The notes beneath the pieces were generated by a model. The model saw only the letters and a list, made by a program, of their open reading frames with translations, searched no databases and was not told where the DNA came from. A DNA stretch of 62,937 bases, counting the filler, from Octopus bimaculoides (taxonomy: Eukaryota): NCBI RefSeq assembly GCF_001194135.2. It is 5 parts of 5 records of this genome, joined end to end, with 100 filler letters (N's around TTAATTAATTAA, not from the genome) between each part and the next. Parts side by side here need not be neighbours in the genome. Positions count along the whole stretch, not along the records: positions 23,882 to 39,184 come from NC_069005.1; 4 more parts are not named here. The stretch is one strand, 5' to 3'. This document shows positions 23,882 through 39,184 of this stretch, one piece after another. The translations under genes and the position numbers were made by a program. Numbering within the stretch: position 1 is the stretch's first letter; each line of letters opens with the position of its first letter.

Positions 23882-24544
23882 GTGTGTGTGTGTGCGTGTG
23901 TGTGCGTGTGTGTGTGTGTCCTCCACCACTACTTGACAACCAGTGTTGGTGTGTTTACATCCCTGTAAGTTAGTGCTTCGGCAAAAGTGACCAGGCTTGA
24001 AAAAGAAGAGGAAATAAAAATTATTAAAAAAAAAAAAGGAAAAAACTGGTGTTGATTCCTTCCGCTCCAAATTCTTCGAAGCAGTGGCCCCAGCATGGCC
24101 ACAGTCAGGTGACTGAAACAAGTAACAGATAAAATATCTTAAGCTGTTTTTTGTTTTGTTTTTTATTTACCAACACTAGTTTTCTTTACACAGTTTTACA
24201 TCAAAAAGTTGCATAAAATAAAAACAGCTCAACTTTTGTATCTTTGTCATTTTTTTTGGGGGGACTCATTTGCATAAAATTAATTAGCAAACAAAAATCA
24301 TGCAAAAGAGAGTAAAAAAAAAAAACTATTAAAAACAAAAAAAATTTAGTTTGCAGTTAAAATGAAACTTTGTGTCTCCAACACAAAAACTGAGTTTACA
24401 AAACAACGATATGCAGACATTTACATTCTCTTACATATATACACTTATATAAACACATACATATACATACATACACATATAGATTGAATATCACAGATTT
24501 ATAAATATTGAAATTTTATAATAGTAATAATAACAATAATAATA

Positions 24545-24992
24545 ATCCTTTCTACTAAAGGCACACAAGGCCTGAAATTCGTTGGGAGGGGACTAGTAGT
24601 TTCATTGGTACTTAATTTATTGACCCCTGAAAGAATGAAAAGCAAAGTCGATCTCGGTGGAATTTGAACTCAGAACGTGAAGACAGACGAAATGCCGCTT
24701 AGCATTTTGCCTGGTATGCTAACGATTCTGCCAGCCCACTGCCTATTAATAAATATAATAATAATAATAATAATAATCCTTTCTACTATAGGCACAAGAC
24801 CTGAAATTTCAGGTGGCGGGGTGCTAGGTGATTGCATCGTCCCCAGTACTCAACTGCTACTTATTTTATTGACCCTAAAAGGGATAAAAGGTAAAGTTGA
24901 CATCGGCAGAATTTGAACTCAAAACGTAGCAATGGCCAACTTACTGTTAAGCATTTTTTCCGGTAAGCCAACAACTCTGCCAGCTCGCTGCC

Positions 24993-25028
<36 letters not shown>

Positions 25029-25395
25029 TTAGCAATGGTTTCAAATTTTACGAGGGCAGCAATTTTAGGGGAGGGAAGGAGTCGATTACATCGACCCCAG
25101 TTTTCAACTGGTACTTATTTTATCGACCCCCCCCCCACCTCAGTGGAATTTGAACTCAGAACGTAGCGACAGCCAAAATACTGCTAAGCATTTTCACCTG
25201 GCATGCTAATGATTCGGCTAGCTCGCCACCTTAATTAGTAATAATAATTCTTTCTACTCTGGGTGCAAGGCCTGAAATTTTTTGGTGAAGAGTAAACTTG
25301 ACCTCAGCAGAATTTGAACTCAGAACATAAAGATGGACAACCGGCCACTAAGCATTCTGTCTGGCATGCTAATGATTCTGCTATCTCACAGCCTT
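24545..25395 (-). mobile_element. Head-to-tail array of four family B SINEs (Nin/Deu-domain-like)
   Basis: Repeated GAGCTGGCAGA..TTCTGAGTTCAAATT..GTCGACTTTGCCTTTCATCC..AAGTACCAG units separated by (AAT)n. Confidence 0.85.
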
Positions 25396-27145: not shown

Positions 27146-29527
27146 CTGGAAAATAGTGAAAGAAGAAAAAGAAAATACATAGTCTTTTACTGGATTCAAT
27201 CACTGGACTGTGGCCATACTGGAGTATATCAATACTTGTTCCAGTCTGGCTCTTGTAAACACTAACATTCTTATTATGTTCTGACATACACAAACTCTTA
27301 TATCACTAGCTGACCACGTGCCGTCAATAACGACGGCTAATTGTAGCATGTTATATATAAATAAGATACAAAATAAGGTACATAATAATCACACATACAC
27401 ATATTCACATACTTCCCTTGTACATGCACACACACACACACACATACATACATACATACGCTTACACGGAGTTGAAATGCTGGCTTTTTTTCACTCCCTT
27501 CCTTCCTTATTCATCTATCACCCCCCTTTCTTTCTTTCATTGCTATTACTTTCTCTCACTCTCTCTCAGTCAGGGCTATTACTCTCACTACTTCTCCTTC
27601 ACTGAATTACTATTTTCTCTCCTCCTCCACGTCCAACATGATTCTGGACAAATGATATATATATATATATATGTAAAAAACACCTTTTTGAGCGTGGCCG
27701 TTGCCAGTACCGTGTGACTGGTCCTCGTGTCGGTGGCACGTAAAAAGCACCCACTACACTCTCGGAGTCGTTGGCGTTAGGAAGGGCATCCAGCTGTAGA
27801 AACTCTGCCAGAACAGACTGGAGCCTGGTGCAGCCATCTGGTTCGTCAGTCCTCAATCAAATCGTCCAACCCATGCCAGCATGGAAAGCGGATGTTAAAC
27901 GATGATGATGATGATGATATATATCACACATACAAATATATAAAAACACTACACTCATTCTTATATTAAGAGATTATTATATACACACACACACACACAC
28001 ACACTCAAGAATAAAGGAGGATGACAATGAGGGAAGGAAGGAAGAGTGGCGGCAGCGCAAATTGATCAAAACATGGACATAGTGAATAATTATGATCAGC
28101 TAATGAATTTATTCATATCGCTGCCACCAGCACTACCACCCCTACAGGTACCATCAGCACGGCCACCTCCACCAACACCACCACCACAACTATCACTACA
28201 GCTACTACTACTGCTACAGACAATGAAGATGACCACCAATGCTAATAATGAAAATTTCTAGTTTTGGCCCAGTTTATGACTGGTTTACAATATCACCCCA
28301 GGAGGATAGATACACAACATTTGAACCCAGGAAGATACGGAATACAACAATAAAGATTGAATCTAGAGTCACTTACTTAATGGTAAATGATCTCACATTG
28401 GCAGAGAAAGGAGAATCACCATCTTCATCAGATATGGCAACCTGCAGCAGAATGGGTGAAGAAAGAGAGAGAAAAATATACAATAGACTAATATGGTGTG
28501 TGTGTGTGTGTGTGTAAATATATGTACATGCAAGAAAATTTAGTTTTAAATGATTCAAATACATGGATTACATTTTATAGAAAAAGAAAAATTATAAAGT
28601 AGTTGTATGCTGTCAACTTAATGTGACAGTCCCATGAAGGGAATAATACTACTGCTATTTAGCCCTAGGAAGCTGCACCGCTTCCTGTCGGCCTTGACAC
28701 ATTTCCTGTGTCTATGTTTACAGTGGGGGAGACAAGCACCTCCACGCAACCAAACCTACATCCAGAGACATGTTTCTGAGTCTTTGCTCGTCATCAGTCT
28801 GGAGTAGCAATGACTTGCTAGTCGAAGATGCTTGTCAAGCTCTTGTAAACATATAACAATTCTAGTGAAATACATTCACTGATTTCAAAAATAGATACAA
28901 CTACTTTATCGTATCACTACTGCATAAATCTCAGAGATTTAGAAATGTATTATTTCTATTTTTGAAAAATTATAAATTAATAGAATAACAATTGTGAAAA
29001 CAGGAAACAAAAAATAAATTGAAATTAATTGAATGCCTCTAAAACTAAGAATATTCTTCTTGAAATGACTAGAGTGGTAAACTAATAGTAATGGCAAATC
29101 TACATAAACATTCAATCCAACTGTGACATGTTCTTAGGACTATGTTTCGCTTCACCTACCACATCTGTGGTTATTTTTATGTATCGCTTAACAAAAGCTA
29201 TACTACCACCTGAACTTCAAAAGCAGGTACCAGAATGTTCTAAACCAGATACAAGACCCTGCTCGTAAGTCGGTAAGACCAGGGTTTTAGTGGAAAGTCT
29301 GTTAGTGAATGAGGGATGTTTACCTTTATGGATTGCTGACTGCGGTTCTTGATAATAACTTTTGTTTTTAGCGTTTCACCCAGATGGCATGGATAAAATG
29401 CCATAACATTTGACTTCACCTCCAAACTCAAGTTGGTGTTACTGAAAGATATCAGTGTTAAACAATTAGTAACAAACGTATGACAGAGAACACAACAGGG
29501 TATAACATTGCATCATGTCCCTTCAAT

Positions 29528-29569
<42 letters not shown>

Positions 29570-30760
29570 ATAATGCCNNNNNNNNNNNNNNNNNNNNNNN
29601 NNNNNNNNNNNNNNNNNNNNNNNNNNNNNNNNNNNNNNNNNNNNNNNNNNNNNNNNNNNNNNNNNNNNNNNNNNNNNNNNNNNNNNNNNNNNNNNNNNNN
29701 NNNNNNNNNNNNNNNNNNNNNNNNNNNNNNNNNNNNNNNNNNNNNNNNNNNNNNNNNNNNNNNNNNNNNNNNNNNNNNNNNNNNNNNNNNNNNNNNNNNN
29801 NNNNNNNNNNNNNNNNNNNNNNNNNNNNNNNNNNNNNNNNNNNNNNNNNNNNNNNNNNNNNNNNNNNNNNNNNNNNNNNNNNNNNNNNNNNNNNNNNNNN
29901 NNNNNNNNNNNNNNNNNNNNNNNNNNNNNNNNNNNNNNNNNNNNNNNNNNNNNNNNNNNNNNNNNNNNNNNNNNNNNNNNNNNNNNNNNNNNNNNNNNNN
30001 NNNNNNNNNNNNNNNNNNNNNNNNNNNNNNNNNNNNNNNNNNNNNNNNNNNNNNNNNNNNNNNNNNNNNNNNNNNNNNNNNNNNNNNNNNNNNNNNNNNN
30101 NNNNNNNNNNNNNNNNNNNNNNNNNNNNNNNNNNNNNNNNNNNNNNNNNNNNNNNNNNNNNNNNNNNNNNNNNNNNNNNNNNNNNNNNNNNNNNNNNNNN
30201 NNNNNNNNNNNNNNNNNNNNNNNNNNNNNNNNNNNNNNNNNNNNNNNNNNNNNNNNNNNNNNNNNNNNNNNNNNNNNNNNNNNNNNNNNNNNNNNNNNNN
30301 NNNNNNNNNNNNNNNNNNNNNNNNNNNNNNNNNNNNNNNNNNNNNNNNNNNNNNNNNNNNNNNNNNNNNNNNNNNNNNNNNNNNNNNNNNNNNNNTATAA
30401 TTTTAAAGACTATTGAATTTTACTCATAAGGTATTGGAATCTTATATGTATACCATTCTGCCTAAATAATGGAACTGAAGATACAATATCCCTGCATATC
30501 TCACATCTATTTTCGTTCCTCCAATTCACTCTCTATTTCGTATCTCATCTAAATTAACTATTGCTTAACCATCTTCTCACACCGTCTCCAATGAAGGGAT
30601 ATAATAAATATCCTGGAAACAGGTGTAAGACCTATTTATAAATGTTCTAAAATATACACAGTATTGGTTTTTTATCTCATTACGAAAAGTATATATATAT
30701 ATATATATATCATCATCATCATCATCATCGTTTAACGTCCGCTTTCCATGCTAGCATGGG

Positions 30761-30800
<40 letters not shown>

Positions 30801-32538
30801 TGACACTGGATCAATATACAAAAACACTGGATTAAGTCAAATATACTGTATACAGCGACACTGGATCAAGTAATACAGGATTAAGTCACTTCAAATATAC
30901 ACAATATTGGATTAAGTCAGCTCAAATACAGACACTGGATTAAGTCACTTCAAATATACAGTGATACTGGATTTAGTTTAAATACATAATAACAATAGAT
31001 TAAATCACCTCAGATATACAGACACTAGATTAAGCTCAAAACCAACCATGTACCCAAGTATGTGGCCAATACACAGTTCATGAGCTTCACATACAAAAAC
31101 AATCTTACATTTGAAAAATAAGGAAATTCCATTTGGTTATCGAGGCTCCATTGTACTGTCTGTTAGAAGCAAACTCAAGGCAATAATTCTAAACAATAGA
31201 AATGGTTTGTAGCTGGAGCAAAAAGTAACCAATTTTTTTTAAATAATGAAGAAAAAGAAAAAAAAAGAAAACAAAAAATATAACGTAGGAGTAGGAGTGG
31301 CTGTGTGGTAAGTAGCTTGCTTACCAACCACATGGCGCCGGGTTCAGTCCCACTGTATGGCACATTGGGCAAGTGTCTTTCAACTATAGCCTCGGGCCGA
31401 CCAAAGCCTTGTGAGTGGATTTGGTAGACAGAAACTGAAAGAAACCCATCGTATANNNNNNNNNNGCCTTGTGAGTGGATTTGGTAGACAGAAACTGAAA
31501 GAAACCCATCGTATATATGTATATACATATATGTATGTGTGTGTGCTTGTGTTTGTCCCCCCAACATCGCTTGACAACTGATGTTAGTGTGTTTACGCCA
31601 CCGTAACTTAGCAGTTCGGCAAAAGAGGCAGATAGAATAAGTACTAGGTTTACAAAGAATAAGTCCTGGGGCCAATTTGCTCAGCTAAAGGCAGTACTCC
31701 AGCATGGCCACAGTCAAAATGACTGAAAAGAGTAAAAGAGAGAGTAAGAGTAAACTGCTGTGACTTACTTCAATGACGGCATGAACATTTCTGCAGTTGT
31801 GGAGGCCACCTTTGGATTGAGGACATCGTTGTCGAGAAACTAAAGAGAAGGAATNNNNNNNNNNNNNNNNNNNNNNNNNNNNNNNNNNNNNNNNNNNNNN
31901 NNNNNNNNNNNNNNNNNNNNNNNNNNNNNNNNNNNNNNNNNNNNNNNNNNNNNNNNNNNNNNNNNNNNNNNNNNNNNNNNNNNNNNNNNNNNNNNNNNNN
32001 NNNNNNNNNNNNNNNNNNNNNNNNNNNNNNNNNNNNNNNNNNNNNNNNNNNNNNNNNNNNNNNNNNNNNNNNNNNNNNNNNNNNNNNNNNNNNNNNNNNN
32101 NNNNNNNNNNNNNNNNNNNNNNNNNNNNNNNNNNNNNNNNNNNNNNNNNNNNNNNNNNNNNNNNNNNNNNNNNNNNNNNNNNNNNNNNNNNNNNNNNNNN
32201 NNNNNNNNNNNNNNNNNNNNNNNNNNNNNNNNNNNNNNNNNNNNNNNNNNNNNNNNNNNNNNNNNNNNNNNNNNNNNNNNNNNNNNNNNNNNNNNNNNNN
32301 NNNNNNNNNNNNNNNNNNNNNNNNNNNNNNNNNNNNNNNNNNNNNNNNNNNNNNNNNNNNNNNNNNNNNNNNNNNNNNNNNNNNNNNNNNNNNNNNNNNN
32401 NNNNNNNNNNNNNNNNNNNNNNNNNNNNNNNNNNNNNNNNNNNNNNNNNNNNNNNNNNNNNNNNNNNNNNNNNNNNNNNNNNNNNNNNNNNNNNNNNNNN
32501 NNNNNNNNNNNNNNNNNNNNNNNNNNNNNNNNNNNNNN

Positions 32539-32574
<36 letters not shown>

Positions 32575-34895
32575 TGAGAGTGTGTGAGTTGTTCAACAGT
32601 AATGCAACTAAGGTAAGTTGTAGAAAGAGGAGTGAGAGAGGAATGAGGGGAAAGAAAGCAGTAAAAGATGGGGAGGAAGAGAGAGGAAAAAGAGAAGCAA
32701 AGAAAGGAGAGAGAGAAAGTGTGTGTGTATGTGATAAAGAGAGAGAGAGAGTTGTAGAGGGTACTTACAGCCTGGAGTGTAACTGGGTGAGTTGAGCAAT
32801 TATCATCAGAGGTGGAGGTGAATTCGAGCAGACAATTTTGGTGACAGACAAAAGTACAATCGAGAAACACTTGCGGATAAAATATTATTGGGATCTGAAA
32901 GATGAAGGAGGAGAAATATTTTGACATTGGTGTTGACGTCACCATCATTATAATCAATGGAGTCACAGCAACACTCCACCAGCACTAGCATCACCAACAC
33001 TAACACAATTACTGCTACCACAACACTCACCCAATCTGTACAACTGATAATATCACCATAACTATCACCAGCACCATCATCACCGTCAGCAGTAGCACCG
33101 CCGACAACCATCATCACCACCACTGCCACCACCACCACCAAAGTTCCAACTACAGCTAATGTAGTCTAATATAACCACTGGTAAAAATAAACTTGATGGC
33201 CATGGGTGGAATGTCTTTGACAAGAGGTCTCCCCGATCAAAGCTGACCCAAGGCTAAGCAACAACAATCTCTTATACAGTTATCTTCTGCCTTCGTGAAA
33301 GGCCTGTTTGGAAGCCCCAACCTTCAAGTTCTTTTTACAGGGCTTAGAAAAACTGAAGGACTGCTNNNNNNNNNNNNNNNNNNNNNNNNNNNNNNNNNNN
33401 NNNNNNNNNNNNNNNNNNNNNNNNNNNNNNNNNNNNNNNNNNNNNNNNNNNNNNNNNNNNNNNNNNNNNNNNNNNNNNNNNNNNNNNNNNNNNNNNNNNN
33501 NNNNNNNNNNNNNNNNNNNNNNNNNNNNNNNNNNNNNNNNNNNNNNNNNNNNNNNNNNNNNNNNNNNNNNNNNNNNNNNNNNNNNNNNNNNNNNNNNNNN
33601 NNNNNNNNNNNNNNNNNNNNNNNNNNNNNNNNNNNNNNNNNNNNNNNNNNNNNNNNNNNNNNNNNNNNNNNNNNNNNNNNNNNNNNNNNNNNNNNNNNNN
33701 NNNNNNNNNNNNNNNNNNNNNNNNNNNNNNNNNNNNNNNNNNNNNNNNNNNNNNNNNNNNNNNNNNNNNNNNNNNNNNNNNNNNNNNNNNNNNNNNNNNN
33801 NNNNNNNNNNNNNNNNNNNNNNNNNNNNNNNNNNNNNNNNNNNNNNNNNNNNNNNNNNNNNNNNNNNNNNNNNNNNNNNNNNNNNNNNNNNNNNNNNNNN
33901 NNNNNNNNNNNNNNNNNNNNNNNNNNNNNNNNNNNNNNNNNNNNNNNNNNNNNNNNNNNNNNNNNNNNNNNNNNNNNNNNNNNNNNNNNNNNNNNNNNNN
34001 NNNNNNNNNNNNNNNNNNNNNNNNNNNNNNNNNNNNNNNNNNNNNNNNNNNNNNNNNNNNNNNNNNNNNNNNNNNNNNNNNNNNNNNNNNNNNNNNNNNN
34101 NNNNNNNNNNNNNNNNNNNNNNNNNNNNNNNNNNNNNNNNNNNNNNNNNNNNNNNNNNNNNNNNNNNNNNNNNNNNNNNNNNNNNNNNNNNNNNNNNNNN
34201 NNNNNNNNNNNNNNNNNNNNNNNNNNNNNNNNNNNNNNNNNNNNNNNNNNNNNNNNNNNNNNNNNNNNNNNNNNNNNNNNNNNNNNNNNNNNNNNNNNNN
34301 NNNNNNNNNNNNNNNNNNNNNNNNNNNNNNNNNNNNNNNNNNNNNNNNNNNNNNNNNNNNNNNNNGTGTGTGTATGTTTGTGTGTGTATGTTTGTCCCTC
34401 TAGCATCGCTTGACAACCGATGCTGGTGTGGTCACGTCCCCGTAACTTAGCGGTTCGGCAAAAGAGAGACCGATAGAATAAGTACTAGGCTTACAAAGAA
34501 TAAGTCCTGGGGGTCGATTTGCTCGACTAAAAGCGGTGCTCTAGCATGGCCACAGTCAAATGATTGAAACAAGTAAAAGAGTAAAAAGAGTTATTTTCAA
34601 AATTAACCGAAACAAAGTCAGTGCATGCTGACAGGAACATAACAAAAGCATTAATAAATGCCAACCTAATGTTATACAGCCCCATCTCTACCTCTAACAC
34701 ACACACACACACACATAACCCTTAGTTTAAGGGTTATGGATGGGAGCTACATGCTACCACCGTTTTTGCACACAACAGTCACTTACTTGGTAGGTCTGTC
34801 CACTGAATAATAACCCTGACAATTGAAATATTTTGAACATATCATATGACCTCATCACAGTTGTCTTGCCTTCATTCTGCAGATAAAGCAAAAAT

Positions 34896-34941
<46 letters not shown>

Positions 34942-36138
34942 TATCTTGATATGAGATCACCATGTCATGCACATATGGTTGTGATGCATGTGCCTGGTGT
35001 ACCCTTATCAGACGGGTAGTCATGATGGGTATAATGGGCTTTGTATATTTTACCCCAGTGTCACTTTGATGGCATGCACTGCTCTCTCACTCAATAATAA
35101 TAATAATAATAATAATACTAATGATAATAATAATGATAATAATAATAATAATAATGATGATAATAATAATCAAGAAATTCAAAAAATAGTGCTCATATCC
35201 TAGAAAAAGACTGTCTATGTGATTCTGAAAAACATTTTAATCTGTAAACATTATCAAAACTACTTTTAAATGTACATAATAGCAAAACACCTTTTACTGT
35301 CATCTTATGGTCACGCTACCATCTTACCATCGAATTACTGTTAAAACAAACTTCTGGTTTTCCAGTGTTTTGACAGACATTCCCTAGAACAATACTCTGT
35401 GCAAAAAACCAAAAATATGGTACCCTAGTCATAACATCAACTTGAATGTCTAACTTGTTGTTTCATGAGGTCTCTGGGTGAGACTTGGAGTCAACAAATA
35501 CAAAGCAAAAGCCAAACATTTAATAATAATAATAATAATAATAATCCCTTCTACTAAAGGTACAAGGCCTGAAAATTACATCAACCTCTTTAAATCTCAC
35601 AATGAGAGATATTCAGCAACAGTACTTTGGAGTAAAGATTGTTTGCCAACATAACATGGCAGTCCTGGTTTAGGACGAATGTTGCTGTAATTTAGCCTCA
35701 GGAGAACCATGTACCTAAGTACGTGGCCAATGAGCTTCACATACAAAAACAATCTTACATTTGAAAAATAAGGAAATTCCATTTGGTTATCGAGGCTCCA
35801 TTGTACTGTCCGTTGACTGTTGTTGGTGATTTCCACATAATTACCTGGAAAAAAGAATATATGTTTTAAGAGAGATTTACATACATACACAAGCATGCAC
35901 AGCAACATAAATATACAAACTTATACACACATAGTAGGGTATGTTCACACAGAATGGGGTGCATACTTGTGTATACATAAATACACAACAGGAAATGTAC
36001 ACACTCTGCAGAGGTATGTACACACCAGGGTCTATAACAATATGTACATACACACATTAGAGCACGTGCATACATGTATACACATACAAACACAGAGAGC
36101 AACACATTTGCAAGGTAATCAGCAGAATATATATACAT

Positions 36139-36193
<55 letters not shown>

Positions 36194-38715
36194 NNNNNNN
36201 NNNNNNNNNNNNNNNNNNNNNNNNNNNNNNNNNNNNNNNNNNNNNNNNNNNNNNNNNNNNNNNNNNNNNNNNNNNNNNNNNNNNNNNNNNNNNNNNNNNN
36301 NNNNNNNNNNNNNNNNNNNNNNNNNNNNNNNNNNNNNNNNNNNNNNNNNNNNNNNNNNNNNNNNNNNNNNNNNNNNNNNNNNNNNNNNNNNNNNNNNNNN
36401 NNNNNNNNNNNNNNNNNNNNNNNNNNNNNNNNNNNNNNNNNNNNNNNNNNNNNNNNNNNNNNNNNNAGAGAGAGAGAGAGAGAGGAGGCAATCAGAATTT
36501 TGGATAACTTCTTTATTAGCGCTTTCGTTCATTTAACCAGACTCTTCAAGAAAAATTGAATCAAAATAATATTTTGGTTCAATTTTTCTTGAAGCGTTTG
36601 GTTAAACGAACAAAAGCACTAACAAAGAATTATCCAAAATTCTGACTAAATGAATGATGGAGACCTTTGGCAACATGCTGTGCTTGAGAAGACCCCATCA
36701 AGCCAAGTGAAATCGCAGTCATGACAGATACTGGTGTCACGCAAATGGCACCTGTGCCAGTGACATATAAAAGCATTACTTACAGCCCTGGTCAAACCAT
36801 CCAACCCATACCGGCATGGACAACAGATGTTAAATGATGATCACACACACTCAATGCAATTTACACGTGTATATATCATCATCATCATTTAACATCTGTT
36901 TTCCATGCTGGCATGAGTTGCACAGTTTAACTGGAGCTGGTAAGGCCAGAGTCTGCACCAGGCTCCTTTGTCTGTTCTGGTATGGTTTCTACAGCTGGAT
37001 GCCCTTCCTAACATGCCAACCACTCCACAGTGTATACAGAGTGCTTTTTATGTGGCATCAGTGCTGATATCAATTCTGATTCTGCTGTGTGTATGTATAT
37101 ACACACACACAGACAAACACACACACAAAGAAGGGGTACTTATACACACACATATATATATATATATATATACAAACATTAGGGTACATACAGGCCAGTT
37201 TGGAGCTTTCCTCAAGATGAAATACGATATTGCTCTCAGTGAGAGAAATGCTAAGTTGGGGTGGCATTTTAGCAACATCACAAGAACGGGGTTGTAATTC
37301 TGTTCCCGCTTCAATGTCAGACCGATGCAGAGCCACTTTGTCTTTCTGGAAAGCTGAACTGTGGGAATTGATGGTCTTGGGATATTCGGCACTAAGATTG
37401 GTTGAAGTGACAGAACTGGAGGAAACAGTACTTTCAGCATGCAGCTTGGTTGAAGAACTGCTAGATTTGGAAGTCAACGGACATTCAGCACTCAGCCTGG
37501 TCAAACTAACAGACTTAGAGGTCGCAGAACCAGCAGACAGCTTAGTTGAAGAGACAGATTTGGAGATGACAGAACGTTCAGCACTACGTTTGGTTGTACT
37601 GACAGAATTAGAGGTCGCAGGATGGTCAGCAGACAGTTTGGCTGAAGAGACAGGCTTGGGGGTTACAGGATTCTTAGAAGTCAGACTGGTCGAACTGTAA
37701 GATTTCGAAATCACAGGATGTTTGCTACTCAGCTTGGTTGAAGCTAAACTTGCTCGGTCGTCTGGGACATTCAGTGTTATTGCCTGCAGTGGTGGTCGAC
37801 CAGGACTAGTTTTAGGAGCGGCGGAGCTTGGCAAGACATGCAGTTGCTGAAATAGAGAAAGGTTGAAATAGTTACATACTAATGACAGGAATGAGAGTAA
37901 CATAATGAATTTAAACAATCAATGTAACTGGAACAACAACAACAACAACAACACTAGAACAACACAAGCAAAACAAAAATGCAAGATTGGCTATTTAAAG
38001 TGACTATATATTGACATATTGACTGTACAGTCACTATATGTGAATGTGTGCATATCATCATCATTTAACCCTTTCGTAACTGTATTTATTTTGAGATGCT
38101 CTGTGTTTCTTTCAATTACTTTAAATATAACAGAGAATTTAGTAAAATAAACTTAGTTATCATTCAGCTAGTGTTGGGAACATAAATTGTGACTAAAGTT
38201 TGTAGAAGATTTTAATTCAGAACTTATGAAAACAAGACATTTGTACTACAGAGCCAGAGGCGGTTTCAGCCAGGTTGGTATCGAAAGGGTTAAATGTAAG
38301 AAAGAATTTAGTAAAATAACTTAGTTATCATTAAGCTAGTGTTAAGAACATAAATTGTGATTAAGGTTTGGTGGAAGATTTTAATTCAGAACTTATGAAA
38401 ACAAGACATTTGTACTCAGAGCCAGAGCCAGTTTCAGCCAGGTTGGTAACAAAAGAGTTAACATCCATTTTCCATGCTGGTATGGATTAGGTGGCTTCAC
38501 AAGCGCTTTCCAGACACCAACTGTCTGTTTTGGCATGGTTTCTGTGGCTGGATGCCCTTCTTAATGCCAACCATCATACCCCACTCCCTATTTTGTTATT
38601 TTAACAACAACAATAATGTTATCTTACTAAAACTTCATCTGCTGTTGTCACATAGATGTAGATTCCTTCAACACCTGGGGCTTCAGTACAGGAGACCTGC
38701 ACACTTTCCACTTTA
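26980..38715 (-). CDS. CEP192: CEP192/SPD-2-like centrosomal protein, C-terminal ~487 aa, 9 exons, 5' end not found in window
   Basis: Exons 38628-38715, 37192-37846, 35759-35844, 34787-34876, 32769-32894, 31769-31839, 29324-29441, 28377-28441, 26980-27145. All have GT-AG ends and the phases chain without a break (2-0,0-1,1-0,0-0,0-0,0-2,2-0,0-2,2-stop). Peptides NYVEITNNSQRTVQWSL..PY, IPIIFYP, AFYPCHLGETLKTKVIIKN and VKLPVYFTP match, from recall, the last ASH domains of human CEP192 (NYLELENHGTTDVKWHLS..PY, VSITFLP, RFRPTSVGESRTLKVNLRN, INMPVQFKP). No search was run. Confidence 0.85.
28377..28441 (-). CDS. CEP192: CEP192-like exon: VAISDEDGDSPFSANVRSFTI
   Basis: Acceptor ATTCTGCTGCAG, donor GTAAGT, 65 nt, phase 0-2. 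Confidence 0.8.
28761..28803 (-). ncRNA. Minimal type I hammerhead ribozyme (Penelope-type)
   Basis: Minus strand reads UCCAGA-CUGAUGA-cGAG caaaga CUCa-GAA-ACAUGUC^UCUGGA: 6-bp stem I, both core boxes intact, palindromic stem III (ACAUGU) and a GUC cleavage triplet. Confidence 0.75.
29324..29441 (-). CDS. CEP192: CEP192-like exon: NTNLSLEVKSNVMAFYPCHLGETLKTKVIIKNRSQQSIK
   Basis: Acceptor ATCTTTCAG, donor GTAAAC, 118 nt, phase 2-0; start of the last ASH domain. Confidence 0.85.
30798..31045. repeat. Minisatellite with core ACACTGGATTAAGTCA(CTTC)AAATATAC
   Basis: About 8 imperfect 20-35 bp units. Confidence 0.75.
31287..31740 (+). mobile_element. SINE family A (antisense in a CEP192 intron)
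   Basis: GGAGTGGCTGTGTGGTAAG head through to tail; N10 overlap artefact inside. Confidence 0.85.
31769..31839 (-). CDS. CEP192: CEP192-like linker exon: FLDNDVLNPKVASTTAEMFMPSL
   Basis: Acceptor CCTTCTCTTTAG, donor GTAAGT, 71 nt, phase 0-2, which fits both neighbouring exons. Confidence 0.75.
32769..32894 (-). CDS. CEP192: CEP192-like exon: IPIIFYPQVFLDCTFVCHQNCLLEFTSTSDDNCSTHPVTLQA
   Basis: Acceptor CTTCATCTTTCAG, donor GTAAGT, 126 nt, phase 0-0. Confidence 0.85.
34787..34876 (-). CDS. CEP192: CEP192-like exon: NEGKTTVMRSYDMFKIFQLSGLLFSGQTYQ
   Basis: Acceptor TTTATCTGCAG, donor GTAAGT, 90 nt, phase 0-0. Confidence 0.85.
35759..35844 (-). CDS. CEP192: CEP192-like exon: (C)NYVEITNNSQRTVQWSLDNQMEFPYFSN
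   Basis: Acceptor TTTTTTCCAG, donor GTAAGA, 86 nt, phase 1-0; start of an ASH domain. Confidence 0.85.
37192..37846 (-). CDS. CEP192: CEP192-like large Ser/Thr-rich linker exon (QLHVLP...EESSKLA)
   Basis: Acceptor CTCTATTTCAG, donor GTATGT, 655 nt, phase 0-1; lies inside ORF 37070-37918. Confidence 0.85.
38065..38461. mobile_element. piggyBac-type MITE with a duplicated right arm, inserted in an RTE tail
   Basis: TTAA-CCCTTTCG...CGAAAGGG-TTAA (38065-38293), then a second right arm ending AAAAGAG-TTAA (38461); host sequence CATCATCAT|TTAA|CATCCATTTTCCATGC. Confidence 0.85.
38628..38715 (-). CDS. CEP192: CEP192-like exon: KVESVQVSCTEAPGVEGIYIYVTTADEVL
   Basis: Acceptor TTTTGTTTTCCAG, donor GTAAGA, 88 nt, phase 2-0. 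Confidence 0.75.
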
Positions 38716-39184
38716 CTGGAAAACAAAAATAAATACATAAACATTATACAAGGGTTTCATTTTGCAGCTGGAGAAAAATTTCTGAACAAGTGGATACTAT
38801 TGTTGTTAATAATAATAACAACAACAACAATAAGAAGAATAACAATAATAATAACAATAACAATAATAATAATAATCTTTTCTACTGGACACACAAGGCC
38901 TCAAATTTCTGGAGAGGGGACTAGTCGATTACATCAACCCCAATGTTTCACTGGTACTTAATTTATTGACCCCAAAAGGAAGAAAGGCAAAGTCTGGAGA
39001 TATTTCTACTGAATGCACACCTAGGTAAAATGAGGTAACCCTCCACTTGTTCCTTTCAAACAAAAACACATGAGAACTCAACAGATTTGAGCATACGACC
39101 CACAAGTAGATGGTGGCTCATCAACTTATCCACTGAGCCACTATTATCCCCCCACAACTGTAAATATTAATAGCATATTAACCC

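What the first reader, a model, noticed from the sequence alone, without database searches (positions are those of the whole stretch)
28731..28836. Nearly intact hammerhead ribozyme in sense orientation inside a CEP192 intron
Seen: on the CEP192 (minus) strand, between exons 29324 and 28441, the RNA reads CUAC-UCCAGA-CUGAUGA-C GAG CAAAGA CUC A-GAA ACAUGUC^UCUGGA-U-GUAG. Both core boxes are intact, stem I is 6 bp plus a 4-bp extension, stem III is the palindrome ACAUGU, and the cleavage triplet is GUC (cut between 28767 and 28766). It sits in an outer helix (GACAAGCAUCU/AGGUGCUUGUC) with a side hairpin (UAGCAA-GUCA-UUGCUA). Established: minimal type I hammerheads with a palindromic stem III mark Penelope-like element repeats and are thought to cut mainly as dimers. 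Inference: a C-A mismatch at the base of stem II may weaken it. If active, it would cut CEP192 pre-mRNA co-transcriptionally, a possible splicing-versus-cleavage control point.
Basis: partly seen in the sequence, partly recalled or inferred. Interest (0 to 1): 0.75.

Follow-up and report, generated by a model that had tools for sequence, protein, structure and literature searches.

The report
Crippled solo hammerhead ribozyme in intron
A real relative of the self-cutting "hammerhead" RNA carried by animal jumping genes sits, as a single copy, in an intron of a Cep192-like gene. It lacks two features its relatives use to cut efficiently, so it is most likely a stranded relic, not a gene switch.

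Summary
On the minus (gene-sense) strand, 28803-28761 reads UCCAGA-CUGAUGA-CGAG-CAAAGA-CUCA-GAA-ACAUGU-C|UCUGGA, with the predicted cut between 28767 and 28766. It lies in an 882-nt GT-AG intron of a Cep192-like gene.

It is not chance. A covariance model built from eight Rfam-validated type-I hammerheads scores it 42.0 bits (rough E 6e-12). The next hit in the piece scores 9.7 bits.

It is the canonical metazoan type-I form found in retrozymes and satellites, not the minimal Penelope form. It has a CAAANA hexaloop on helix II, and loop-1 nucleotides CUAC and UG in the family register. It tops a 141-nt rod-like hairpin.

Three things argue against efficient cutting:
- No Rfam hammerhead model reports it, even at E<=10.
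- The most conserved helix pair, G10.1-C11.1, is a C.A mismatch.
- Helix III is a 6-nt palindrome (self-duplex about -4.6 kcal/mol, against -10 to -11 in relatives), and no second copy exists in the readable 12.5 kb.

Best reading: a stranded, catalytically weakened solo copy of a hammerhead-bearing retroelement unit.

The splicing-versus-cleavage switch is unsupported but not excluded. No cephalopod sequence was available, so conservation and copy number are untested.

Interest is low to moderate. Hammerheads of this kind are already known by the hundreds in a cephalopod genome.

The parts
28761..28803 (-). Hammerhead-like three-way junction. Helix I is UCCAGA/UCUGGA. The core is CUGAUGA...GAA. 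Helix II is CGAG/CUCA with hexaloop CAAAGA. Helix III is the palindrome ACAUGU, followed by C17.
   Evidence: Sequence. Custom family CM R1 gives 42.0 bits, E 6e-12, full-length match. The descriptor is unique in the piece.
28766..28767 (-). Predicted scissile bond: GUC(28767)|U(28766).
   Evidence: Position relative to the core. It aligns with the cleavage site of Rfam-validated relatives. Cleavage itself is not tested.
28777..28790 (-). Helix II and loop 2. C10.1 (28790) lies opposite A11.1 (28777), a mismatch where the family has G-C. Three Watson-Crick pairs GAG/CUC follow, then loop CAAAGA.
   Evidence: Flagged as a non-standard pair in the CM alignment. Comparators have G-C in 6 of 7 and G-U in 1 of 7. 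PMC3088659 calls it the most conserved pair after 15.1-16.1.
28768..28773 (-). Helix III, the 6-nt palindrome ACAUGU. As a monomer it can form only 1 bp plus a tetraloop. It is 2 nt shorter than the ACACGUGU/ACAGCUGU of relatives.
   Evidence: CM alignment shows a 2-nt deletion. Self-duplex is -4.6 kcal/mol, against -10.3 and -11.1.
28804..28807 (-). CUAC immediately 5' of helix I. This is the loop-1 position of canonical type-I hammerheads.
   Evidence: The same CUAC occurs in the same register in L119, L122, L009 and L023. It matches exactly in the CM alignment.
28759..28760 (-). UG immediately 3' of helix I, the 3' side of loop 1.
   Evidence: Invariant in all 8 comparators and matched.
28713..28853 (-). 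A 141-nt rod-like hairpin (49 bp) with the hammerhead at its tip. It includes the 11-13 bp helix 28836-28824/28743-28731 and the outer 10-bp helix 28853-28844/28722-28713.
   Evidence: For the 191-nt stretch 28690-28880 that contains the hairpin, MFE is -64.9 kcal/mol and z is -4.5. For the 106-nt core, the minus strand folds at -40.7 (z -3.9) against -31.1 for the plus strand. Relatives L058, L060 and L087 also close helix I with flank pairing.
28442..29323 (-). The 882-nt host intron (GT..AG) between exons 29441-29324 and 28441-~28377 of a Cep192-like gene.
   Evidence: Splice signals and reading frame. Pfam Cep192_D8, Cep192_D4 and ASH give weak hits.

Best explanation
This is one stranded unit, or part of one, of a hammerhead-bearing retroelement. 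The element family is that of non-LTR retrozymes and satellite-like repeats, themselves linked to Penelope-like elements. The unit inserted in sense orientation into an intron of a Cep192-like gene.

Shown here: the RNA would fold into a long rod whose tip is a canonical type-I hammerhead. Also shown: the G10.1-C11.1 pair at the base of helix II is a C.A mismatch. Helix III is cut down to a 6-nt palindrome that cannot close as a monomer. There is no second copy nearby to form the dimeric helix III that weak-helix-III hammerheads rely on.

Inferred: self-cleavage of the pre-mRNA is therefore absent or very slow, the intron is spliced normally, and the element has no host function. It may be tolerated in sense orientation precisely because it is crippled.

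Also inferred: the C.A mismatch is most simply one CpG-to-CpA transition (CUCG to CUCA) from a C10.1-G11.1 ancestor, since the region is strongly CpG-depleted.
For: Homology:
- CM R1, built from eight Rfam-validated Hammerhead_1 sequences, scores 28815-28749 at 42.0 bits (rough E 6e-12). The next hit in the piece is 9.7 bits.
- The 18 bases used to fish out the comparators match by construction. However, most of the 100 comparator loci searched, which were all selected by that pattern, gave no hit at E<=0.01 (about 20 bits). CUAC, UG, GUC and the helix I and II pairing are independent of the pattern.
- The comparators covary strongly in this register: 93.9% of cells paired, against 23-42% when the partners are slid.

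Context:
- The rod-like closure is shared with relatives.
- A giant squid genome survey found 235 Hammerhead_1 loci (PMC6962438).

Weakening features:
- No Rfam hammerhead hit at gathering threshold or at E<=10, although the same model finds the relatives at 36-49 bits.
- C.A at 10.1/11.1. PMC3088659 says this is the most conserved pair after 15.1-16.1 and that U.U is the best-tolerated mismatch.
- The ACAUGU self-duplex is -4.6 kcal/mol, Kd about 0.6 mM.
- Hammerheads with a one-pair helix III cut poorly as monomers and well as dimers (PMC7229834, PMC4209133).
- No second copy by pattern, repeat, tandem, CM or blastn search.
- The active-like secondary structure costs 2.8 kcal/mol over the MFE, which pairs core A6-U7-G8 with CAU of helix III.
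- CpG observed/expected is 0.39.
Against: - The 13 core nucleotides, all six helix I pairs, three helix II pairs, the loop-1 and loop-2 signature and most of the 49-bp rod are intact. That is more than expected for an old, neutrally decaying insert, so it is either young or constrained.
- A mismatch at the base of helix II is not always fatal. Axolotl HHR_Amex2 (U.U) still cleaved 22% in one hour (PMC7229834).
- The C.A mismatch and the short helix III could be family-wide features of an octopus lineage, not damage.
- 2,785 nt of the piece are assembly gaps, the nearest at 29578-30395, and could hide another copy.
- No cephalopod sequence could be compared, so conservation is unknown.
Confidence: 0.7

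Rival explanations
1. An active, domesticated intronic ribozyme. It cuts the Cep192-like pre-mRNA co-transcriptionally in competition with splicing, like the conserved amniote intronic hammerheads in RECK, C10orf118/CTCL and DTNB.
For: Sense orientation in an intron. The core, helix I and loop signature are fully intact. The structure is clearly better on the sense strand, -40.7 against -31.1 kcal/mol. Precedent for domestication of retroelement hammerheads in introns exists (PMC6155905, PMC3088659).
Against: C.A replaces the most conserved helix pair. Helix III cannot close as a monomer, and its dimer is about 6 kcal/mol weaker than in relatives. There is no partner copy. No Rfam HH9, HH10 or Hammerhead_1 hit. 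No conservation evidence is available. In vertebrates, retrozymes are reported as depleted from introns (bioRxiv 10.64898/2026.07.22.740005).
Confidence: 0.12
2. A solo fragment of a Penelope-like element pLTR carrying a minimal PLE hammerhead.
For: The palindromic 15.2-16.2 region and very short helix III resemble PLE min-HHRs. Most PLE hammerheads occur as dispersed single motifs (PMC4209133). Retrozymes are proposed to derive from PLE pLTRs (bioRxiv 10.64898/2026.07.22.740005).
Against: PLE min-HHRs have a 6-8 bp helix II, an unpaired nucleotide after A9 with G10.1-C11.1 retained, a 4-5 bp helix I and no loop-loop signature (PMC4209133, PMC6155905). Here helix II has 4 positions with a CAAANA hexaloop, helix I is 6 bp, and CUAC/UG are present. 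No RT or GIY-YIG domain was found in the nine gap-free ORFs of 70 aa or more that were scanned.
Confidence: 0.1
3. Chance resemblance to a hammerhead in AT-rich intron sequence.
For: None of Rfam's hammerhead models reports it. A loose full descriptor is expected about 0.5 times in a genome of octopus size.
Against: 42.0 bits against a next-best 9.7 with a family model. CUAC and UG match in exact register, and the loop 2 CAAANA and the rod closure are not part of the descriptor. The expectation for this piece is about 2e-6.
Confidence: 0.02
4. A different intronic RNA: a C/D-box snoRNA (UGAUGA as the C box), or a long hairpin processed as a miRNA or ADAR substrate, with the hammerhead likeness incidental.
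For: Weak Rfam hits to C/D snoRNA families over UGAUGA (7.8-13.7 bits, E 2-9). A stable 141-nt hairpin.
Against: No D box (CUGA) lies downstream of the C-box-like motif. All scores are far below gathering thresholds. The hairpin tip is a 43-nt three-way junction, not a pre-miRNA loop.
Confidence: 0.03

Closest known systems
Canonical metazoan type-I hammerhead (Rfam RF00163 Hammerhead_1), as in Schistosoma Sm-alpha, newt/axolotl satellite 2 and invertebrate non-LTR retrozymes
   Same: CUGAUGA and GAA core boxes, A15.1-U16.1, a GUC site, a 6-bp helix I, a 4-position helix II with a CAAANA hexaloop, loop-1 CUAC/UG in the same register, a palindromic helix III, and flank pairing that closes helix I into a rod.
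   Different: C.A in place of G10.1-C11.1. The helix III palindrome is 6 nt, not 8. The loop 2 fifth base is G, not A or U. It is a single copy, not a tandem array. It falls below Rfam's threshold.
Axolotl/newt HHR_Amex1 and HHR_Amex2 (PMC7229834)
   Same: [quoted passage not shown] Amex2 has a mismatch (U.U) at the base of helix II and low monomer activity.
   Different: Those sit in about 330-350-bp tandem repeats with tens of thousands of copies, so dimer partners are on the same transcript. The octopus copy combines both weaknesses and has no partner.
Minimal hammerheads of Penelope-like elements (PMC4209133)
   Same: Type I topology, a vestigial palindromic helix III, mostly dispersed single copies, and low activity in vitro.
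   Different: PLE min-HHRs have a long helix II, an extra nucleotide after A9, a conserved G10.1-C11.1 and no loop-loop signature. None of these fits here.
Conserved amniote intronic hammerheads HH9/HH10 (RECK, C10orf118/CTCL, DTNB; PMC6155905, PMC3088659)
   Same: A type-I hammerhead of retroelement ancestry lying in sense orientation inside an intron of a protein-coding gene.
   Different: Those are active as monomers in vitro and conserved across mammals and birds. Here activity and conservation are untested, the sequence features argue against monomer activity, and there is no Rfam HH9/HH10 hit.

Membership tests
Hammerhead ribozyme, type I (Rfam RF00163) | Core boxes C3-U4-G5-A6-N7-G8-A9 and G12-A13-A14 | tested here: met
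   CUGAUGA at 28797-28791 and GAA at 28776-28774. Aligned to core columns.
Hammerhead ribozyme, type I (Rfam RF00163) | A15.1-U16.1 pair and a non-G nucleotide (H17) 5' of the scissile bond | tested here: met
   A28773...U28768, C17 = 28767.
Hammerhead ribozyme, type I (Rfam RF00163) | Helix I open-ended, about 6 bp, directly abutting the core | tested here: met
   UCCAGA/UCUGGA, six Watson-Crick pairs, present in the MFE fold.
Hammerhead ribozyme, type I (Rfam RF00163) | G10.1-C11.1 pair at the base of helix II | tested here: not met
   C28790 lies opposite A28777, flagged as non-standard. Comparators have G-C in 6 of 7 and G-U in 1 of 7.
Hammerhead ribozyme, type I (Rfam RF00163) | Loop 1 / loop 2 signature of canonical metazoan motifs (UAC...U around helix I; CAAANA hexaloop) | tested here: met
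   CUAC, UG and CAAAGA in the family register. The tertiary contact itself is not testable here.
Hammerhead ribozyme, type I (Rfam RF00163) | Score at or above Rfam's gathering threshold (34 bits) | tested here: not met
   No hammerhead family is listed at gathering or at E<=10, even in a 76-nt search. By my extrapolation that means below about 10 bits, or removed by filters. As a positive control, relatives scored 36.5-48.6 bits.
Hammerhead ribozyme, type I (Rfam RF00163) | Significant match to a covariance model of validated members | tested here: met
   R1 gives 42.0 bits, rough E 6e-12, full length. Part of the score comes by construction from the 18-base fishing pattern.
Hammerhead ribozyme, type I (Rfam RF00163) | Site-specific self-cleavage | not testable with these tools
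   Needs in vitro transcription or RNA end mapping.
Non-LTR retrozyme | Two or more hammerhead-bearing units in head-to-tail tandem (about 170-400 bp) | tested here: not met
   One copy only. Assembly gaps leave a small loophole.
Non-LTR retrozyme | Unit RNA folds into a rod closed on helix I of a canonical type-I hammerhead | tested here: met
   141-nt hairpin with 49 bp; the 191-nt stretch containing it has z -4.5.
Penelope-like element min-HHR | Long (6-8 bp) helix II with an unpaired nucleotide between A9 and G10.1, and no loop-loop signature | tested here: not met
   Helix II has 4 positions with a hexaloop, and the loop signature is present. Criteria are from PMC4209133 and PMC6155905.
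Penelope-like element min-HHR | Lies in a pLTR next to an RT/GIY-YIG ORF | tested here: inconclusive
   No RT or EN Pfam hit in nine ORFs of the piece. However, most PLE hammerheads are solo, and no six-frame search was done.
Domesticated intronic hammerhead (HH9/HH10 type) | Conserved in the orthologous intron across distant species | not testable with these tools
   No cephalopod sequence is present in any collection. The exon peptide found no homologue, and the exact-motif metagenome scan was empty.
C/D-box snoRNA | C box (RUGAUGA) near the 5' end and D box (CUGA) near the 3' end, joined by a terminal stem | tested here: not met
   UGAUGA is present but no CUGA lies downstream in the hairpin. 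Rfam hits are 7.8-13.7 bits against cut-offs of 35-80.

The most novel reading that the evidence does not exclude
The motif is a conditionally active, host-retained intronic ribozyme. The adenosine of the C.A mismatch (28777) sits in a long double-stranded rod, opposite a C, which is the context ADAR enzymes prefer (my own knowledge, not tested here).

In a cephalopod, A-to-I editing there would create a C-I pair, rebuild helix II and switch on cleavage of the Cep192-like pre-mRNA. Helix III would be supplied by a protein or by a second transcript.

Nothing here tests this. It is merely not excluded.
Probability: 0.03. Interest if true: 0.8.

Novelty: new member of a known kind. Interest (0 to 1): 0.25.

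Why it matters
If it is a relic, it is one more dispersed hammerhead copy in an invertebrate genome. That is useful mainly for annotation, and it shows that Rfam thresholds miss diverged copies which a family-specific model recovers.

It would matter more if the motif proved conserved and active. It would then be the first invertebrate counterpart of the amniote intronic hammerheads, in a centrosome gene. It would also give a tractable case for asking whether intronic self-cleavage competes with splicing.

Tried and rejected
1. Rfam at gathering threshold on the whole piece, and at E<=10 on 361 nt and 76 nt: no hammerhead family. Only spurious C/D snoRNA and FIE3 hits driven by UGAUGA. The snoRNA reading was rejected for lack of a D box.
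2. Search for a partner or tandem copy by core pattern, repeat finder, TRF, CM with filters off, and blastn with word size 7: none. The repeat finder's largest families, D1 and I1, are runs of N.
3. Orthologues: the two-exon peptide found nothing in the 5.8-billion protein set. I therefore did not spend look-ups on encoding contigs. The exact-motif scan of metagenome contigs was empty.
4. The viral-contig scan with the relaxed pattern gave seven chance matches without helix II pairing.
5. I could not evaluate the dimeric fold with cofold, because an intermolecular helix III combined with an intramolecular helix I is a crossing structure. I used the self-duplex energy of the palindrome instead.
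6. A 16 x 50 Mb simulation timed out. It was replaced by a 40 Mb Markov simulation plus analytic factors.
7. The supplement of PMC7229834 holds no octopus or CAAAGA entries.
8. Pfam on nine ORFs found no transposon domains.
9. I suspected that loci L091, L081, L057 and L051 were amniote HH9. Rfam did not confirm this at gathering threshold.
Full report
**1. What is there**

Its parts are:
- CUAC (28807-28804)
- UCCAGA (28803-28798)
- CUGAUGA (28797-28791)
- CGAG-CAAAGA-CUCA (28790-28777)
- GAA (28776-28774)
- ACAUGU (28773-28768)
- C (28767), then the predicted cut
- UCUGGA (28766-28761)
- UG (28760-28759), whose G also begins GUAG (28759-28756)

The gene runs on the same strand. Exons 29441-29324 and 28441-~28377 flank a GT..AG intron of 882 nt. 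Their joined peptide gives weak Cep192_D8, Cep192_D4 and ASH hits. 'Sense orientation in a Cep192-like intron' therefore holds.

Two details need correction:
- The side hairpin UAGCAA/UUGCUA shares CUA with the claimed CUAC/GUAG extension, so both cannot form. The hairpin is not in the MFE fold.
- The enclosing hairpin is larger than reported. It spans 28853-28713, 141 nt and 49 bp. The 191-nt stretch 28690-28880 that contains it folds at -64.9 kcal/mol, z = -4.5.

The sense strand folds clearly better than the antisense strand: -40.7 against -31.1 kcal/mol for the 106-nt core.

**2. Chance**

The bare core pattern occurs once in the window, against 0.16 expected. In 40 Mb of Markov sequence with this piece's composition, the core pattern occurred 6.8 times per Mb of strand.

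I multiplied that by the probability of each further requirement:
- a 6-bp helix I: 0.0029
- a helix II of at least 3 bp: about 0.086
- a self-complementary helix III: about 0.05

The result is about 9e-5 per Mb of strand. That is about 2e-6 for this piece and about 0.5 for an octopus-sized genome. The further matches described next make chance untenable.

**3. Relatives from elsewhere**

No tool holds cephalopod DNA. The exon peptide found no homologue, and an exact-motif scan of metagenome contigs was empty.

A relaxed scan (CTGATGA N4 CAAANA N4 GAAAC) of metagenome contigs returned 120 loci. Among them were clear hammerheads, for example L122: GCUAC-GCACUG-CUGAUGA-GCCG-CAAAUA-CGGC-GAAAC-ACGU-GUC-CAGUGC-UG.

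Rfam's Hammerhead_1 model recognised nine of twenty such loci at 36.5-48.6 bits, with a cut-off of 34. This serves as a positive control for Rfam and supplies a validated comparison set.

The validated relatives covary strongly in helices I and II. 93.9% of cells are paired, against 23-42% when the partners are slid, and all six helix I pairs show double changes.

They also carry CUAC (or a near variant) immediately 5' of the six helix I bases, and an invariant UG immediately 3' of the other strand. The octopus sequence has exactly CUAC and UG in that register.

**4. Model test**

I built a covariance model (R1) from eight Rfam-validated sequences with 12-nt flanks. It scores 28815-28749 at 42.0 bits (rough E 6e-12), full length. 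The next best hit in the 15.3-kb piece is 9.7 bits.

There is a caveat. The 18 bases of the fishing pattern match by construction. However, most of the 100 comparator loci searched, which were all selected by that pattern, gave no hit at E<=0.01, about 20 bits. More than 20 bits therefore come from independent features.

The alignment flags two departures:
- a non-standard pair at 10.1/11.1 (C.A in place of G-C)
- a 2-nt deletion in the centre of the helix III palindrome (ACAUGU against ACACGUGU or ACAGCUGU)

**5. Which kind of hammerhead**

Penelope-like element minimal hammerheads have a 7-8 bp helix II and a 4-5 bp helix I. They also have an unpaired nucleotide between A9 and G10.1, keep the G10.1-C11.1 pair, and have no loop-loop interaction (PMC4209133, PMC6155905).

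This motif has the other, canonical architecture: helix I of 6 bp, helix II of 4 positions with a CAAANA hexaloop, and the loop-1 nucleotides. That is the form found in retrozymes and satellite-like repeats (PMC7229834). The rod that closes helix I is also seen in relatives L058, L060 and L087.

A giant squid genome survey reported 235 Hammerhead_1 loci (PMC6962438), so the family lives in cephalopods. No RT or GIY-YIG domain was found in nine ORFs of the piece. No second copy exists in the readable sequence.

**6. Is it likely to cut?**

Arguments against:
- No Rfam hammerhead model lists it even at E<=10 in a 76-nt search. By my extrapolation this means under about 10 bits, or that it was filtered out.
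- 10.1-11.1 is the most conserved helix pair after 15.1-16.1, and U.U is the best-tolerated mismatch (PMC3088659).
- Helix III can form only one pair plus a tetraloop as a monomer. Such hammerheads cut poorly alone and well as tandem dimers (PMC7229834, PMC4209133).
- The palindrome's self-duplex is only -4.6 kcal/mol, Kd about 0.6 mM. Relatives give -10.3 and -11.1. No partner lies on the same transcript.
- The MFE fold pairs core A6-U7-G8 with CAU of helix III. Freeing the core costs 2.8 kcal/mol.

Arguments for some activity:
- Everything else is intact.
- The axolotl HHR_Amex2, with a U.U mismatch at the base of helix II, still cleaved 22% in an hour (PMC7229834).

**7. Origin of the mismatch (inference)**

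Getting C.A from G-C needs two transversions at exactly the two paired positions. Getting it from a flipped C-G pair needs one CpG-to-CpA transition (CUCG to CUCA). The piece has a CpG observed/expected ratio of 0.39, with excess TpG and CpA.

Among the metagenome copies, 10.1/11.1 also shows G-U (L023, L058, L057), A-U (L014), G.A (L087) and even C.A (L061). Such variants are therefore common in genomic copies.

**8. Verdict**

This is a genuine hammerhead relative, most likely a stranded and weakened solo unit of a hammerhead-bearing retroelement (confidence about 0.7). Chance and snoRNA or miRNA readings are unlikely.

The kind is well known, and this copy is a new member of it. Conservation, copy number and activity could not be tested here, and they are the decisive experiments.

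Noticed in passing
window 29578-30395, 31456-31465, 31855-32538, 33366-34365, 36194-36466: Runs of N (assembly gaps, 2,785 nt in all). The repeat finder's top families (D1, and the inverted repeat I1 of 837 nt) and many long 'ORFs' of X are artefacts of these runs.
   Followed up: yes
window 28864-28880 and 28696-28712 (minus strand): Two small 6-bp hairpins (AGUGAA..UUCACU and GACACA..UGUGUC) directly flank the 141-nt hairpin on either side. Whether they belong to the inserted element is unknown. No target-site duplication was seen.
   Followed up: partly
window 24516-24589, 24747-24820, 35515-35588, 38846-38919 (with 24606-24744, 24855-24993, 25256-25394): A dispersed, SINE-like repeat family. 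A (TAA)n tract is followed by CCTTTCTACTA.AGGCACAAGGCCTGAAATTT, and three partial copies are clustered at 24.5-25.4 kb.
   Followed up: no
window 23920-24005, 31558-31643, 34397-34482: An 86-nt repeat (CCTCCACCA..CTTGACAACC..GTAACTTAGCGGTTCGGCAAAAGAG), 64-73% identical between copies. Each copy sits just after a GT-rich microsatellite or an assembly gap.
   Followed up: no
window 27776-27918, 30712-30762, 36783-37012, 38523-38571: Another interspersed repeat found in both orientations (GTTAGGAAGGGCATCCAGCTGTAGAAAC... and ...CATGCCAGCATGGAAAGCGGATGTTAAACGATGATGAT). Up to 96% complementary between 27868-27918 and 30712-30762.
   Followed up: no
window 37070-37918 (minus), repeats at 37364-37716: A large Ser/Thr-rich open frame, presumably a big exon of the same gene. 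It contains about five degenerate 48-nt (16-residue) coding repeats (...SKSVSSTKLSAE...). No Pfam domain was found.
   Followed up: partly
window 38121-38461: A 168-bp unit present as two tandem copies, 90% identical.
   Followed up: no
window 36509-36629: A near-perfect 60-nt inverted repeat (88% complementary) with a 1-nt spacer, just after an assembly gap.
   Followed up: no
L091 5820-5885, L081 5214-5277, L057 5064-5128, L051 12382-12449 (metagenome contigs WLWD01...): A conserved hammerhead-like motif (CUGAUGA-GCUC-CAAAAA-GAGC-GAAAC) with a long, different helix III region. It scores 28-38 bits with my model but is not recognised by any Rfam hammerhead family at gathering threshold.
   Followed up: partly
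L061 4535-4595 (MKWU01013127.1): A hammerhead-like copy that also has C at 10.1 and A at 11.1 (CUGAUGA-CACC-CAAAAA-GGGA-GAAAC-AGCUGUC). This shows the same substitution pattern occurs in another genome's copies.
   Followed up: no
L068 1063-1130 and 1427-1495: Two hammerhead copies lie 364 nt apart on one metagenome contig, which is retrozyme-like spacing. TRF reported no tandem repeat, so the units are diverged.
   Followed up: partly
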